Position numbers and translations under genes: made by a program. A model generated the notes under the pieces. The model was given only the letters and a program-made list of their open reading frames with translations, ran no database searches and was not told the origin of the DNA. From contig NW_021836270.1 in assembly GCF_006345805.1 (NCBI RefSeq), positions 1 to 24,765 on the forward strand: a stretch of DNA of 24,765 nt, in the 5' to 3' direction. How positions within the stretch are numbered: the stretch's first letter is position 1; the number at the start of each line of letters is the position of its first letter. Positions 3,524-17,000 of this stretch are shown one piece after another. Source of the stretch: Octopus sinensis. Taxonomy: Eukaryota.

Positions 3524-3933
3524 GAGTGAGAGAGCAGTGCATGCTACCAAAGTGATACTGGGGTAGAATTATACAAAGCCCAATATACCCATCATGTCTA
3601 CGCATCTGGTAAGGGTACACCAGGCGCATGCATCACAACCACATGTGTGCAACATGGTGATAAACAGCACATGATCTCACAGGTGGGGCCCAGTTAGAAT
3701 ATTTTTCAAGTTAAGTAGCCCATCCCACTCAAAAGGTCCCTGAATAAGGTTTCTTTAAGGACGATGAACAAAATGCACATTTTTCTAGAGGTGAATTATC
3801 CAAACCTCCAAGAATCCCTCTCAACACATGTCTATGATGCCCCCCCCCCACTACATCTACTCGTGATCAGAGATGCACATATTGTCAGCCACCAAGGGAC
3901 ATGCTCAACTGGTTAAGGTCAAACAACTGACAG
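3524..3933. mobile_element. Body (~410 bp) of a non-coding dispersed element, copy 1
   Basis: Collinear with 13273-13678 (about 85% identical by rough count), with the same left terminus ATT|GAGTGAGAGAGCAG. No ORF. Orientation undetermined. Confidence 0.85.
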
Positions 3934-5035
3934 GCAAATCTGTGGTATTGAGCAGAATATTTGCTGTAGCCCATCTTTTATACCAAGACAAAACAATGTA
4001 CATGATAACACTCCCAATCAGTTAAGATCAGAAGTCACGAGAGCCACTGCCTGGTACTGCATCAGGGCATTAGCAAATCTGTGGTATTGAGCAGAATATT
4101 TGCTGTAGCCCATCTTTTATACCAAGACAAAACAATGTACATGATAACACTCCCAATCAGTTAAGATCAGAAGTCACGAGAGCCACTGCCTGGTACTGCA
4201 TCAGGGCATTAGCAAATCTGTGGTATTGAGCAGAATATTTGCTGTAGGCCATCTTTTATACCAAGACAAAATAATGTACATGGTAACACTTCCAATCAGT
4301 TCAGATCAGAAGCCATGAGAGCCACTGCCTGGTACTGCATCAGGGCATTAGCAAATCTGTGGTATTGAGCAGAATATTTGCTGTAGGCCATCTTTTATAC
4401 CAAGACAAAACAATGTACATGATAACACTTCCAATCAGTTCAATCAGAAGCCATGAGAGCCACTGCCTGGTACTGCATCAGGGCATTAGCAAATCTGTGG
4501 TATTGAGCAATATTTGCTGTAGGCCATCTTTTATACCAACAAAATAATGTACATGGTAACACTTCAATCAGTTCAGATCAGAAGCCATGAGAGCCACTGC
4601 CTGGTACTGCATCAGGGCATTAGCAAATCGTGGTATTGAGCAGAATATTTGCTGTAGCCATCTTTTATACCAAGACAAAACAATGTACATGATAACACTT
4701 CCAATCAGTTCAGATCAGAAGCCATGAGAGCCACTGCCTGGTACTGCATCAGGGCATTAGCAAATCTGTGGTATTGAGCAGAATATTTGCTGTAGGCCAT
4801 CTTTTATCCAAGACAAAACAATGTACATGATAACACTTCCAATCAGTTCAGATCAGAAGCCATGAGAGCACTGCCTGGTACTGCATCAGGGCATTAGCAA
4901 ATCTGTGGTATTGAGCAAGAATATTTGCTGTAGCCCATCTTTTATACCAGACAAAACAATGTACATGATAACACTTCCAATCAGTTCAGATCAGAAGCCA
5001 CAAGATCCACTGCCAAGTACTACATCAGGGCATTT
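3934..5035. repeat. Tandem array of 8 x 139-bp monomer at the terminus of the dispersed element, copy 1
   Basis: GCAAATCTGTGG starts at 3934, 4073, 4212, 4351, 4489, 4623, 4760 and 4897; the array ends CATCAGGGCATTT followed by (ATT)n. Confidence 0.97.
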
Positions 5036-5052
5036 ATTATTATATTATTATT

Positions 5053-5871
5053 CAGTAGTTTTTTTATAGCGTACTTTTACTTCACTACCGAGCGCAGCTC
5101 TGTGTACCTTGGGTATGTGCTGTGATTTGTTGTGATGCTCTGATGGTTATTGTATGGAAAGTGTTCTGCGTAGGATGTGTGCAGTGCCTAGTAGTGCAAT
5201 TTTCTGTATGTTATGTGGTTGTAAGTCCTGGTGTTTTTGTTAGTATTTGTCTGAATATTTTTTTATCATGCCTAATGCACCTGCTATGATAGGAATTGTT
5301 TCTGTTTTCAGATTCCACATTCTAGTTACCTCTATTTCCAGGTCTTTGTATTTTGAGAGTTTTTCTCCATTTCTTTTAGAGACATGTTGTCATCAGCCGT
5401 ATTGATACATCAATTAGAAGCATTTTTTTTCTTCATGATCTCTGACAACTATATCGGTCTGTTGGCCTTAATTTCTCTATCTGTGTGTATCGGCATATCC
5501 CAGAGTATGGTTGCTTTCTCGTTTCTGTGACCTTTTCTGGTGTGTGCCTATACCATCTTTTTTCTGTTGTTATTCCATAATGTTGGCATAGCTTCCAATG
5601 TATGTAGGTTCCAACTCTGTCATGTCTGTGAATATATTCCTTCTTAGCCACGACTGGGCAGCTAGAGATAATATGATTTATTGTTTCTTGTCCATCTCCA
5701 CATATTCTGCAGTTACTTGTAATATTTCTTTTCATTACATGTTTTTGGTAATTTCTGGTGGGGAGGCTTTGGTCTTGTGCTGCAATTAAAAATCCCTCTG
5801 TTTCTGCTTTGAGTCCTGAGCTTCTCAACCATTGCTGGGATTTTTCTTTGTCTATTTCTTTTGCGTTTAGT
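5053..5871 (-). mobile_element. 5'-truncated R4/Dong-like LINE (subfamily F1): CCHC knuckle, RLE domain, 3' UTR, (AAT)n tail; frameshifted
   Basis: QWLRSSGLKAETEGFLIAAQDQSL...CRICGDGQETINHIISSCP...HDRVGTYIHWKLC. After frameshifts the C-terminus resembles the 9678-9890 copy (stop at 5147-5149). (ATT)n tracts lie on both sides. Confidence 0.92.
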
Positions 5872-13678: not shown

Positions 13679-16600
13679 GCAAATCTGTGGTATTGAGCAG
13701 AATATTTGCTGTAGCCCATCTTTTATACCAAGACAAAACAATGTACATGATAACACTTCCAATCAGTTAAGATCAGAAGCCATGAGAGCCACTGCCTGGT
13801 ACTGCATCAGGGTATTAGCAAATCTGTGGTATTGAGCAGAATATTTGCTGTAGGCCATCTTTTATACCAAGACAAAACAATGTACATGATAACACTTCCA
13901 ATCAGTTAAGATCAGCAGCCATGATAGCCACTGCCTGGTACTGCATCAGGGCATTAGCAAATCTGTGGTATTGAGCAGAATATTTGCTGTAGGCCATCTT
14001 TTATACCAAGACAAAACAATGTACATGATAACACTCCCAATCAGTTAAGATCAGAAGTCACGAGAGCCACTGCCTGGTACTGCATCAGGGCATTAGCAAA
14101 TCTGTGGTATTGAGCAGAATATTTGCTGTAGCCCATCTTTTATACCAAGACAAAACAATGTACATGATAACACTTCCAATCAGTTAAGATCAGAAGCCAT
14201 GAGAGCCACTGCCTGGTACTGCATCAGGGCATTAGCAAATCTGTGGTATTGAGCAGAATATTTGCTGTAGGCCATCTTTTATACCAAGACAAAACAATGT
14301 ACATGATAACACTCCCAATCAGTTAAGATCAGAAGTCACGAGAGCCACTGCCTGGTACTGCATCAGGGCATTAGCAAATCTGTGGTATTGAGCAGAATAT
14401 TTGCTGTAGCCATCTTTTATACCAAGACAAAACAATGTACATGATAACACTCCCATCAGTTAAGATCAGAAGTCACGAGAGCCACTGCCTGGTACTGCAT
14501 CAGGGCATTAGCAAATCTGTGGTATTGAGCAGAATATTTGCTGTAGCCCATCTTTTATACCAAGACAAAACAATGTACATGATAACACTTCCAATCAGTT
14601 AAGATCAGAAGCCATGAGAGCCACTGCCTGGTACTGCATCAGGGCATTAGCAAATCTGTGGTATTGAGCAGAATATTTGCTGTAGGCCATCTTTTATACC
14701 AAGAAAAACAATGTACATGATAACACTCCCAATCAGTTAAGATCAGAAGTCACGAGAGCCACTGCCTGGTACTGCATCAGGGCATTAGCAAATCTGTGGT
14801 ATTGAGCAGAATATTTGCTGTAGGCCATCTTTTATACCAAGACAAAACAATGTACATGATAACACTCCCAATCAGTTAAGATCAGAAGTCACGAGAGCCA
14901 CTGCCTGGTACTGCATCAGGGCATTAGCAAATTGTGGTATTGAGCAGAATATTTGCTGTAGCCCATCTTTTATACCAAGACAAACACATGTACATGATAA
15001 CACTTCCAATCAGTTAAGATCAGAAGCCATGAGAGCCACTGCCTGGTACTGCATCAGGCATTAGCAAATCTGTGGTATTGAGCAGAATATTTGCTGTAGG
15101 CCATCTTTTATACCAAGACAAAACAATGTACATGATAAACTCCCAATCATTTAAGATCAGAAGTCACGAGAGCCACTGCCTGGTACTGCATCAGGGCATT
15201 AGCAAATCTGTGGTATTGAGCAGAATATTTGCTGTAGCCCATCTTTTATACCAAGAAACAAACAATGTACATGATAACACTTCAATCAGTTAAGATCAGA
15301 AGCCATGAGAGCCACTGCCTGGTACTGCATCAGGGCATTAGCAAATCTGTGGTATTGAGCAGAATATTTGCTGTAGGCCATCTTTTATACCAAGACAAAA
15401 CAATGTACATGATAACACTCCCAATCAGTTAAGATCAGAAGTCACGAGAGCCACTGCCTGGTACTGCATCAGGGCATTAGCAAATCTGTGGTATTGAGCA
15501 GAATATTTGCTGTAGCCCATCTTTTATACCAAGACAAAACAATGTACATGATAACACTTCCAATCAGTTAAGATCAGAAGCCATGAGAGCCACTGCCTGG
15601 TACTGCATCAGGGCATTGCAAATCTGTGGTATTGAGCAGAATATTTGCTGTAGCCCCTCTTTTATACCAAGACAAAACAATGTACATGATAACATTTCCA
15701 TCAGTTAAGATCAGAAGCCATGGGAGCCACTGCCTGGTACTGCATCAGGGCATTAGCAAATCTGTGGTATTGAGCAGATATTTGCTGTAGCCCATCTTTT
15801 ATACCAAGACAAAACAATGTACATGATAACATTTCCAATCAGTTAAGATCAGAAGCCATGGGAGCCACTGCCTGGTACTGCATCAGGGCATTAGCAAATC
15901 TGTGGTATTGAGCAGAATATTTGCTGTAGCCCATCTTTTATACCAAGACAAAACATGTACATGATAACATTTCCAATCAGTTAAGATCAGAAGCCATGGG
16001 AGCCACTGCCTGGTACTGCATCAGGGCATTAGCAATCTGTGTGGTATGAGCAGAATATTTGCTGTAGCCCATCTTTTATACCAAGACAAAACAATGTACA
16101 TGATAACACTTCCAATCAGTTAAGATCAGAAGCCAGAGCCACTGCCTGTACTGCATCAGGGCATTAGCAAATCTGTGGTATTGAGCAGAATATTTGCTGT
16201 AGCCCCTCTTTTATACCAAGACAAAAAACATGTATGATAACATTTCCAATCAGTTAAGATCAGAAGCCATGGGAGCCACTGCCTGGTACTGCATCAGGGC
16301 ATTAGCAAATCTGTGGTATTGAGCAGAATATTTGCTGTAGCCCCTCTTTTATACCAAGACAAAACAATGTACATGATAACATTTCCAATCAGTTAAGATC
16401 AGAAGCCATGGGAGCCACTGCCTGGTACTGCATCAGGGCATTAGCAAATCTGTGGTATTGAGCAGAATATTTGCTGTAGCCCATCTTTTATACCAAGACA
16501 AAACAATGTACATGATAACATTTCCAATCAGTTAAGATCAGAAGCCATGGGAGCCACTGCCTGGTACTGCATCAGGGCATTAGCAAATCTGTGGTATTGA

Positions 16601-16996
16601 GCAGAATATTTGCTGTAGCCCATCTTTTATACCAAGACAAAACAATGTACATGATAACACTTCCAATCAGTTAAGATCAGAAGCCATGAGAGCCACTGCC
16701 TGGTACTGCATCAGGGCATTAGCAAATCTGTGTATTGAGCAGAATATTTGCTGTAGCCCATCTTTTATACCAAGACAAAACAATGTACATGATAACACTT
16801 CCAATCAGTTAAGATCAGAAGCCATGAGAGCACTGCCTGGTACTACTGCATCAGGGCATTAGCAAATCTGTGGTATTGAGCAGAATATTTGCTGTAGCCC
16901 ATCTTTTATACCAAGACAAAACAATGTACATGATAACACTTCCAATCAGTTAAGATCAGAAGCCATGAGAGCCACGTTCTGGTACAGCATCAGGGC

Positions 16997-17000
<4 letters not shown>
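13679..17000. repeat. Tandem array of 24 x 139-bp monomer (satellite-like) at the terminus of the dispersed element, copy 2
   Basis: Units start at 13679, 13818, 13957, 14096, 14235 and onward to ~16862; the array ends CATCAGGGCATTT(ATT)n. No unique spacers. Confidence 0.97.

What the first reader, a model, noticed from the sequence alone, without database searches (positions are those of the whole stretch)
3524..17000. Two old dispersed elements carry near-identical young 139-bp terminal arrays (8 and 24 units): possible satellite spreading into TE copies
Seen: both copies have the layout body (~410 bp) + [139 bp]n + (ATT)n, with the same internal junction (GGGCATTA|GCAAATC) and the same termini. 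The bodies differ by roughly 15% (about 15 differences in the first 135 bp, plus indels). Internal monomers at the two loci differ by as little as 1 in 139 (3934-4072 vs 13957-14095) and share the linked variant ACTCCCAATC + AGTCACGAGAG. The outermost monomer ends are diverged at both loci (CACAAGATCCACTGCCAAGTACTAC at ~5000; CACGTTCTGGTACAGC at ~16975). Inference: the arrays are younger than their hosts. They may have been put into, or converted within, a pre-existing single terminal unit by homologous recombination with a circular or rolling-circle 139-mer, or by gene conversion between loci 10 kb apart. An alternative is iterative re-priming or template jumping during reverse transcription in a progenitor. 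Either would be a TE-to-satellite transition caught in progress.
Basis: partly seen in the sequence, partly recalled or inferred. Interest (0 to 1): 0.75.

Follow-up and report, generated by a model that had tools for sequence, protein, structure and literature searches.

The report
Octopus retroposon tail amplified into arrays
Two neighbouring copies of an octopus SINE-like mobile element have had their last 139 bases multiplied into tandem arrays of 8 and 24 units that are much fresher than the elements carrying them; this is a real but already known way for satellite DNA to arise from a mobile element.

Summary
The window is Octopus DNA. It holds two direct copies of one dispersed element, each a ~410-bp body followed by 139-bp units (8.0 and 24.0) and then (ATT)n.

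The bodies differ at 12.7% of aligned sites plus 30 gap columns. Interior units differ by 2.4% within arrays and 2.9% between them, and they share a linked three-site variant. The last 38 nt of the two terminal units differ at 10 of 38 sites.

Seven independent related copies in Logan contigs carry the body plus one unit (one adds a partial second unit; two contigs end or are cut inside it), often followed by (ATT)n. Three O. bimaculoides gene-model fragments show the same. The 'monomer' is therefore the element's own 3' segment. One O. bimaculoides fragment has at least 2.3 units with the same inter-unit junction.

Polarised against outside copies, the array consensus has 0-1 derived sites per ~100, against 10-12% for the bodies. 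One contig (L002) is collinear with the copy-2 locus, including the same LINE truncation point, yet holds 1.45 units.

Best reading: a SINE-derived satellite evolving in concert, with arrays renewed by recombination or gene conversion. Recent insertion of multi-unit masters is not excluded. No evidence bears on circular intermediates. This is a new member of a known kind.

The parts
13228..13272 (+). (ATT)15 tract immediately 5' of copy 2. Probable target microsatellite.
   Evidence: TRF; sequence. Outside copy L009 also has (ATT)n before the body.
13273..13678 (+). Body of copy 2 (~406 bp). Non-coding, with no recognisable RNA-gene head.
   Evidence: Aligns with copy 1 at 12.7% substitutions plus indels. 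Matched by the nhmmer profile. No Rfam match even at E<=5. 25 of 253 polarised sites are derived.
13679..16999 (+). Array B: 24 units of 139 bp. B03-B14 alternate between variant X and the consensus type. B15-B22 form two blocks of about four units (78T/107G units plus one consensus unit). B24 is the terminal unit.
16962..16999 (+). Diverged outer 38 nt of terminal unit B24 (115G, 116T, 117T, 125A).
17000..17037 (+). (TTA)13 tract after array B. The junction reads GGGCATTT(ATT)n.
   Evidence: The same junction occurs in copy 1 and in O. bimaculoides protein P0121 ('...YCIWAFIIIIIII').
3524..3933 (+). Body of copy 1 (~410 bp). It is preceded by ...(GAT)6 ATT, the tail of an unrelated element.
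   Evidence: 30 of 253 polarised sites are derived. It keeps ancestral states ('PNL.ESL') seen in outside copies.
3934..5034 (+). Array A: 8 units. A01-A02 are variant X with 37C. A03-A07 carry the private 91C, with 61T/72G in A03 and A05 only. A08 is the terminal unit.
4997..5034 (+). Diverged outer 38 nt of terminal unit A08 (6 substitutions).
5035..5055 (+). Short (ATT)n tract after array A. It is shared with the (AAT)n tail of the adjacent minus-strand LINE.
   Evidence: A second LINE copy ends the same way, at 9561-9582 (95.7% identical).
5056..5871 (-). Context: a 5'-truncated LINE fragment of the R2/R4/Dong type, inserted into the (ATT)n tract downstream of copy 1. The rest of that tract lies at 5872-5940.
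   Evidence: zf-RVT match; match to the C-terminus of R2 protein, E=8.8e-7; flanks.
12121..13227 (-). Context: an old LINE fragment of the same type, immediately upstream of copy 2. Its truncation point and 510 bp of it are shared with contig L002.
   Evidence: ORFs. L002 3-510 aligns with window 12678-13191 at 75%. Junction alignment.

Best explanation
Shown. The window comes from an Octopus genome. It carries two direct-orientation copies, 10 kb apart, of a non-autonomous, SINE-like element. The canonical form of this element is a ~420-bp body, one 139-nt 3' segment, and then an (ATT)n tract. It sits in (ATT)n microsatellites. In these two copies the 3' segment is tandemly amplified, 8 and 24 times. 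All arrays, including one in O. bimaculoides, share a single inter-unit junction (GGGCATT|AGCAAATC), so the founding duplication happened once.

Inferred. The interior units at the two loci form one pool that is almost identical to the family's ancestral sequence. The bodies and the outer 38 nt of the last units are old and locus-specific. The most likely cause is homology-driven turnover in two parts:
- unequal exchange within arrays, which explains the block and alternating patterns;
- non-allelic gene conversion that imported or refreshed units from a less decayed family member, most simply exchange between these two neighbouring arrays and with other multi-unit copies.

Conversion tracts would stop short of the array's outer edge, where homology ends. 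That would leave the outer edge unconverted.

In short, this is a SINE-derived satellite at an early stage, undergoing concerted evolution.
For: - Organism: the LINE ORF's best hits are O. bimaculoides proteins at 81-92% identity.
- Canonical single-unit form: L002, L005, L007, L008, L009-13 and L014 show the body plus one unit, and L003/4 run off the contig inside the first unit. L002, L008 and L009 have (ATT)n after the unit. P0121, P0122 and P0127 show the same.
- Shared junction: window arrays and P0125 ('HQDI|SKSVV').
- Age contrast: bodies differ at 12.7%, interior units at 2.4-2.9%, and the outer 38 nt at 26%.
- One pool: within-array and between-array distances are nearly equal. The three-site variant X is present in both arrays. 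All four combinations of site 37 with X occur, which indicates recombination among units.
- Polarisation: the array consensus has 0-1 derived sites of 61-107; win1 has 30 and win2 has 25 of 253 (Fisher p = 0.0005-0.0025). The result is stable across four of five outgroup sets; the strictest set is borderline (p = 0.05-0.09).
- General constraint is too weak to explain this: among ordinary copies the unit/body distance ratio is about 0.8, not 0.1-0.2.
- Copy 2 is old in place: L002 shares 510 bp of the upstream LINE and its exact 5' truncation point, while four LINE copies in the window have four different truncation points. L002 has 1.45 units.
- In-situ growth: B15-B22 is two blocks of about four units, and A03-A06 is a repeated pair.
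- Same anatomy and between-locus homogeneity in squamate SINE-derived satellites.
Against: - Only two array-bearing loci could be read. No octopus genome assembly was reachable, so the family-wide relation between unit number, body subfamily and age is unknown.
- L002's species is unknown, and its orthology is inferred from one junction. An old duplication or a co-mobilised composite would also fit.
- The first unit of each array is consensus-like from its first base, while the body is diverged right up to the junction. On the conversion model this needs tract ends very close to the boundary.
- Part of the body divergence is subfamily difference rather than decay. Copy 1 keeps ancestral states that the O. 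bimaculoides majority has lost.
- Neutral theory does not predict slower divergence of an array's consensus, so a conserved donor must exist somewhere. It was not seen here.
Confidence: 0.5

Rival explanations
1. Both copies are recent insertions of multi-unit master elements from two subfamilies. On this reading the body differences are subfamily-diagnostic changes accumulated in master lineages. The 139-nt 3' segment stays ancestral because the mobilising reverse transcriptase needs it. The arrays were carried in by transposition.
For: - The multi-unit state arose once and exists at another locus in O. bimaculoides (P0125).
- O. bimaculoides single-unit fragments such as P0122 have near-consensus units, so a master with a conserved unit was recently active.
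- The unit is somewhat more conserved than the body among ordinary copies (ratio about 0.8).
- Copy 1's body carries old-subfamily states rather than only private changes.
- Insertion order relative to the young LINE at 5056 is ambiguous.
- O. vulgaris has about 900 recently active SINE families (PMC13282606).
Against: - L002 shares the upstream LINE's truncation point with copy 2. This implies that the copy-2 insertion predates about 25% flank divergence.
- The outer 38 nt next to the tail would be the part a reverse transcriptase recognises first. Yet it is the most diverged part and differs between the two copies (10 of 38).
- Two master lineages 13% apart in the body would have to keep multi-unit arrays identical, including a shared polymorphic variant X.
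Confidence: 0.25
2. Reverse-transcriptase re-priming or template jumping back to the (AUU)n tail during retroposition produced the arrays at birth.
For: - The repeated segment runs exactly from the end of the body to the first ATT of the tail (junction GGGCATT|AGCAAATC). A jump from the unit's 5' end back to the tail would give this.
- It is a plausible origin for the single founding duplication.
Against: - It predicts that all units, the terminal one included, and the body are of one age in a given copy. Observed values are interior 2-3%, bodies 12.7%, and outer edge 26%.
- Independent jumps would not give shared unit variants between loci.
- The block duplications inside array B indicate DNA-level growth.
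Confidence: 0.1
3. Extrachromosomal circular or rolling-circle 139-mers re-integrated by homologous recombination into single-unit copies.
For: It is compatible with ancestral-like units appearing inside old copies and with arrays of whole units. There is no direct evidence.
Against: - No free-standing satellite array or solo unit was found in the window.
- The unit has no special fold (z = +1.0).
- Ordinary gene conversion or unequal exchange explains the same data without an extra intermediate.
Confidence: 0.05
4. The interior homogeneity or the unit counts are assembly or polishing artefacts.
For: The units carry about 1% single-base indels relative to the consensus (35 deleted, 9 inserted). 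This is typical of unpolished long-read consensus in repeats, so these arrays were hard for the assembler.
Against: - Substitution variants are organised in blocks and alternating patterns, with locus-private variants. Multi-mapped polishing would erase such patterns.
- The arrays are 1.1 and 3.3 kb, well within single long reads.
- The multi-unit junction is independently present in an O. bimaculoides gene model.
Confidence: 0.05

Closest known systems
SINE-derived satellites (sSats) of squamate reptiles (Vassetzky, Kosushkin & Ryskov 2023, PMC10702118)
   Same: - The tandem units derive from part of a SINE.
- An extended terminal unit continues into the rest of the SINE up to its terminus.
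- Long loci are homogeneous both within and between loci, which the authors interpret as concerted evolution.
- Alternating di- and trimeric unit patterns occur.
- Short loci coexist with single-unit SINE copies.
   Different: - The host is a cephalopod. The authors state they do not know whether sSats exist outside squamates.
- The parent element here has no recognisable pol III head, so its SINE status is unproven.
- The element ends in and sits in (ATT)n microsatellites.
- The arrays are modest, at 8 and 24 units.
- Here the units can be shown to be far less derived than the adjoining SINE remainder.
   Same: The host is a mollusc. A dispersed element carries a short array of about 140-170-bp units next to a microsatellite, and it is viewed as a seed for satellite DNA.
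   Different: Those elements have a right arm after the microsatellite and rolling-circle-type termini. Here the sequence after (ATT)n differs between copies, and there are no terminal inverted repeats and no Helitron-like ends.
PcH-sat of the limpet Patella caerulea, derived from a Nin-SINE (PMC11121367)
   Same: A mollusc satellite whose unit is largely a SINE segment (abstract).
   Different: PcH-sat is a mature pericentromeric satellite making up about 10% of the genome, without the parental element attached. Here the arrays are still embedded in recognisable element copies.
VNTR region of hominid SVA retroposons (own knowledge)
   Same: A non-autonomous retroposon whose internal tandem repeat varies in copy number between copies.
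   Different: The SVA VNTR has 35-50-bp units, is internal rather than 3'-terminal, and varies mainly through transposition of different masters.

Membership tests
SINE-derived satellite (sSat) | The repeat unit is homologous to a segment of a dispersed short element that normally carries it once. | tested here: met
   Seven independent Logan loci have the body plus one unit, and three O. bimaculoides fragments show the same.
SINE-derived satellite (sSat) | The array is flanked by an extended unit that continues into the rest of the element up to its terminus. | tested here: met
   The body is joined to unit 1 at the same junction in both copies. The last unit ends at the element's 3' end, GGGCATTT(ATT)n.
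SINE-derived satellite (sSat) | Units are homogeneous within and between loci (concerted evolution). | tested here: met
   2.4% within arrays and 2.9% between arrays, against 12.7% for the bodies.
SINE (short interspersed element, strict sense) | A 5' head derived from tRNA, 5S or 7SL, with an internal pol III promoter. | tested here: not met
   No Rfam match at the gathering threshold or at E<=5. No tRNA by ARAGORN. T4 runs occur in both strands of the unit and in the body.
SINE / non-LTR retroposon | A defined 5' end and a 3' simple-repeat tail. | tested here: met
   The same 5' start, (T)GAGTGAGAGAGC, occurs in both window copies and nearly the same in L003. (ATT)n follows the unit in both window copies, P0121, L002, L008 and L009.
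SINE / non-LTR retroposon | Target-site duplications flank the insertion. | tested here: inconclusive
   Both flanks are microsatellite ((ATT)n before and after copy 2), so a duplication cannot be told apart from the target tract.
SINE / non-LTR retroposon | The 3' end is shared with a partner LINE. | tested here: not met
   There is no similarity to the 3' UTR of the only LINE family in the window. That LINE's tail is (AAT)n on its own sense strand, the opposite strand of the microsatellite. A different partner may exist elsewhere in the genome.
Helitron/Helentron-type tandem-repeat carriers (bivalve pearl/HINE) | Rolling-circle termini or terminal/subterminal inverted repeats, and a conserved right arm after the microsatellite. 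| tested here: not met
   The best terminal inverted match is 6-9 bp. The sequences after (ATT)n are unrelated: a LINE after copy 1 and a SINE after copy 2.
Classical satellite DNA | Long (tens of kb or more), often heterochromatic arrays that exist independently of the parent element. | not testable with these tools
   No octopus assembly could be searched. Pattern scans of metagenome and viral contigs found nothing. Within the window, no units exist outside the two arrays.

The most novel reading that the evidence does not exclude
A nascent satellite spreads sideways among copies of its own parent element that are already in place. On this reading, old and decayed single-unit copies had their 3' unit overwritten and expanded by units imported from another family member through non-allelic gene conversion, possibly via an extrachromosomal intermediate. 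Copy 2 is the clearest candidate, because its locus seems to predate about 25% flank divergence and has 1.45 units in contig L002. Satellite arrays would then colonise dispersed TE copies without transposition, and L002 versus the window would be a before-and-after pair.
Probability: 0.4. Interest if true: 0.6.

Novelty: new member of a known kind. Interest (0 to 1): 0.4.

Why it matters
How dispersed mobile elements turn into tandem satellites is usually reconstructed after the fact. Here both states are visible side by side: single-unit copies elsewhere, and 8- and 24-unit arrays still attached to recognisable element bodies. The arrays carry a measurable age contrast, being ancestral-like inside hosts that are 10-12% derived. 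A probable orthologous 'before' locus is also available.

This would extend SINE-derived satellites from squamates to cephalopods, whose genomes are unusually rich in SINEs and microsatellites. It also offers a tractable case for measuring how often non-allelic conversion, rather than transposition, propagates a young satellite.

The practical point is that such arrays are likely to be collapsed or mis-sized in octopus assemblies.

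Tried and rejected
Searches that found nothing useful:
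- Six-frame translation of both bodies as a protein query, to fish out called ORFs from other assemblies: no hit at E<=0.001. The same approach on the array did work.
- Exact 23-26-mers of the unit and the body in metagenome and viral contig collections: 0 matches.
- Look-ups of window ORFs and of O. bimaculoides UniRef proteins for genomic context: not on record. L001 proved to be a non-octopus eukaryote.
- Papers naming the SRA runs or the E63 core sequence: none. The species of the Logan contigs therefore stays unknown.

Hypotheses tested and rejected:
- A tRNA, 5S or other RNA-gene head: none found.
- Homology between the unit and the body, or between the element and the LINE 3' UTR, the tRNA-like SINE or the E63 element: scores no better than shuffles. 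nhmmer found no further copies or relics in the window.
- A stable fold of the unit: z = +1.0.
- Terminal inverted repeats or Helitron-like ends: none.
- A segmental duplication covering each copy plus its downstream SINE: the two SINEs are 80% alike, the same as any SINE pair in the window, and the upstream flanks are unrelated.
- CpG decay as the cause of the body's extra divergence: only 6 of 50 substitutions are CpG-type.
- A conversion gradient in the last 60 nt of the body: 4 of 60 sites differ against 12.7% overall, which I judge too few sites to distinguish (counts; no formal test run).

Full report
**What is there.** TRF reports two 139-bp arrays on the + strand, at 3934-5034 (8.0 copies) and 13678-16999 (24.0 copies). 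Each is preceded by a homologous non-repetitive body of about 410 bp (3524-3933 and 13273-13678) and followed by an (ATT)n tract. A profile search finds no other body or unit in the window, and no homology between the unit and the body. The sequence is non-coding in all six frames. It has no Rfam or tRNA match, no notable fold and no terminal inverted repeats.

**Organism and setting.** ORFs on the minus strand are LINE fragments. One has a zf-RVT domain, and the joined C-terminal region matches the zinc-finger and endonuclease end of R2 retrotransposon proteins (E = 8.8e-7). Its best protein relatives are Octopus bimaculoides gene models at 81-92% identity, so the window is Octopus DNA.

Every LINE fragment in the window is bracketed by (ATT)n on the + strand. 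The fragments have four different 5' truncation points. The tRNA-like SINE copies and the element studied here also sit in (ATT)n.

From general knowledge, Dong/R4-type LINEs target (TAA)n. Dong-R4 is the LINE group with the most recently active insertions in O. vulgaris, and that genome has about 900 mostly unclassified, recently active SINE families (PMC13282606).

The short (ATT)n after copy 1 (5035-5055) is also the tail of a minus-strand LINE. That LINE split a longer tract, whose remainder lies at 5872-5940.

- The bodies align end to end with 50 substitutions in 393 aligned sites (12.7%; K2P 0.14) plus 30 gap columns. Differences continue to the base before the array.
- Aligning each unit to the consensus and counting substitutions only, interior units differ by 2.4% within array A, 2.4% within array B and 2.9% between arrays.
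- A01 and A02 differ from B03, B05, B09 and B13 at one site.
- A linked three-site variant (80C, 102T, 105C) occurs in A01-A02 and in seven B units.
- All four combinations of site 37 with that variant exist, which indicates recombination among units.
- Each array also has private variants: 91C in A03-A08, and 78T/107G in B15-B17 and B19-B21.
- Each array shows block patterns: A03-A06 as a repeated pair, B03-B14 alternating, and B15-B22 as two blocks of about four units. The arrays have therefore also grown in place.
- The two terminal units match the consensus for about 100 nt (1 difference in 99 between them) and then diverge (10 of 38).

**The unit is the element's own 3' end.** A six-frame translation of the array found O. 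bimaculoides protein A0A0L8HEN8 (P0121). This is a spurious gene model that reads through the 3' half of a body, exactly one unit and then (ATT)7, with the same GGGCATTT(ATT)n junction.

A full-library phmmer search with that protein gave 17 relatives. They are further O. bimaculoides fragments and ORFs on short Logan contigs from several sequencing runs.

All seven independent contigs show the body plus a single unit:
- L002 has one unit plus a partial second unit covering unit positions 74-139.
- L003/4 run off the contig inside the first unit.
- L005, L007, L008, L009-13 and L014 have one unit.
- Three of them have (ATT)n after the unit, and one has (ATT)n before the body.

One O. bimaculoides fragment (P0125) has at least 2.3 units with the same inter-unit junction as the window. 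The canonical element is therefore body + one unit + (ATT)n. The multi-unit state is derived, and its founding duplication happened once.

**The arrays are fresher than their hosts.** I polarised changes against the majority state of the outside copies.
- The array consensus is derived at 1 of 100 informative sites.
- The two bodies are derived at 30 and 25 of 253 sites, 13 of them shared.
- Five outgroup choices give 0-1 derived sites per 61-107 for the array consensus, against 6-12% for the bodies (Fisher p about 0.0003-0.02 in four of them, 0.05-0.09 with the strictest set).
- General constraint on the unit does not explain this. Among ordinary single-unit copies the unit diverges about 0.8 times as fast as the body.

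Under neutral drift, homogenisation does not slow the divergence of an array's consensus. The units were therefore not simply inherited in place alongside these bodies.

As a rough scale, I used the published octopus calibration of JC 0.09 for about 25 My and 0.2 for about 56 My. On that scale the bodies correspond to roughly 19 My per lineage, and the between-array unit distance to roughly 4 My. These figures are inference only.

**A probable 'before' locus.** Contig L002 is collinear with the copy-2 locus. Its bases 3-510 align at 75% with the LINE fragment upstream of copy 2 (12678-13191). The alignment runs up to the same LINE 5' truncation point, after which the element follows. A microhomology deletion has removed the (ATT)n and the first 90 bp of the body.

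Truncation points differ among the window's other LINE copies. L002 is therefore most simply the orthologue, or an old duplicate, of this locus. It has 1.45 units where the window has 24. Its species could not be identified.

**Mechanism.** The best-supported reading has two parts:
- recombination-based turnover by unequal exchange within arrays;
- non-allelic gene conversion that imported or refreshed units from a less decayed family member, most simply between these two direct arrays 10 kb apart and other multi-unit copies.

Conversion tracts would end before the outer edge, where homology stops.

The main rival is that both copies are recent insertions of multi-unit masters from two subfamilies, whose 3' unit is conserved because the reverse transcriptase needs it. 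Three points support it:
- The multi-unit state arose once.
- Near-consensus single units occur in O. bimaculoides.
- Copy 1's body carries old-subfamily states.

Two points count against it. L002 is one. The other is that the outer 38 nt, the part nearest the priming site, is the most diverged part.

Template jumping could have made the first duplication but does not explain the age contrast. Nothing bears on circular intermediates.

An assembly artefact is unlikely, given the structured variants and the independent O. bimaculoides junction. However, about 1% single-base indels in the units mean the counts need read support.

**Comparison and verdict.** The anatomy and behaviour match the SINE-derived satellites described in squamates. 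Those have tandem units from part of a SINE, an extended terminal unit reaching the SINE terminus, homogeneity within and between loci, and alternating unit patterns (PMC10702118).

Membership in 'SINE' in the strict sense fails on the pol III head. No partner LINE was found. Helitron-type carriers of tandem repeats, known in bivalves, do not fit.

The finding is real and well characterised. It is a new member of a known kind, in a new phylum. Its useful extra is that the arrays can be shown to be nearly undiverged inside decayed hosts.

Noticed in passing
window 3019-3523, 6193-7765, 19561-19832 (+); 22692-22839 (-): A second SINE-like family carries its own tandem array: 62-63-bp units (5.4, 5.3 and 1.4 copies), then a ~170-bp core (…GGAGTGGTTGGCGTTAGGAAGGGCATCCAGCTGTAGAAAC…), then an (ATG)n tail. 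Upstream of the second copy, 6193-7420 holds a ~300-320-bp higher-order repeat (about 4 copies) built from similar units. TE-borne arrays therefore seem common in this genome.
   Followed up: partly
window 5056-5871, 7935-8252, 8378-8693, 9583-9888, 10698-11366, ~11408-13227 (all minus strand): Six fragments of one LINE family with an R2/R4/Dong-like C-terminal zinc finger and endonuclease. Each is bracketed by (ATT)n on the + strand and ends in (AAT)n on its own strand. This is a cluster of microsatellite-targeted insertions, all in one orientation.
   Followed up: partly
window 5941-6190, 7773-7905, 8847-9058, ~10460-10660, 17038-17226, ~24366-24510 (+); 17227-17442 (-): tRNA-like SINE copies, 73-84% alike, each lying in or next to (ATT)n. 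Both 139-bp arrays are followed by (ATT)n and then one of these SINEs. At 80% identity between the two SINEs, this looks like shared target preference rather than a duplication.
   Followed up: yes
L002 511-545 vs window 13192-13362: In the contig collinear with the copy-2 locus, the (ATT)n tract and the first ~90 bp of the body are missing. The breakpoint lies at a shared GTAC/ATAC, which suggests a microhomology-mediated deletion.
   Followed up: partly
window 3934-5034 and 13679-16999: 35 deleted and 9 inserted single bases relative to the unit consensus, mostly 1-bp deletions. This looks like uncorrected long-read consensus error concentrated in the arrays.
   Followed up: partly
protein P0048: A UniRef entry labelled 'hypothetical protein, Escherichia coli' is 84% identical to this octopus LINE ORF. 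It is probably a contaminated or mislabelled record.
   Followed up: no
window 223-1117, 17503-18152, 18591-18996: Very long impure trinucleotide tracts: (CAT)n of about 900 bp, and (TGG)n/(GTG)n of about 650 and 400 bp. Their origin was not examined.
   Followed up: no
protein P0132 (O. bimaculoides A0A0L8HKP9): A family copy in which the unit stops at about position 47 (…CATCTTTT) and runs straight into (ATT)n. This suggests that the internal TTTTAT can seed, or recombine with, the microsatellite.
   Followed up: no
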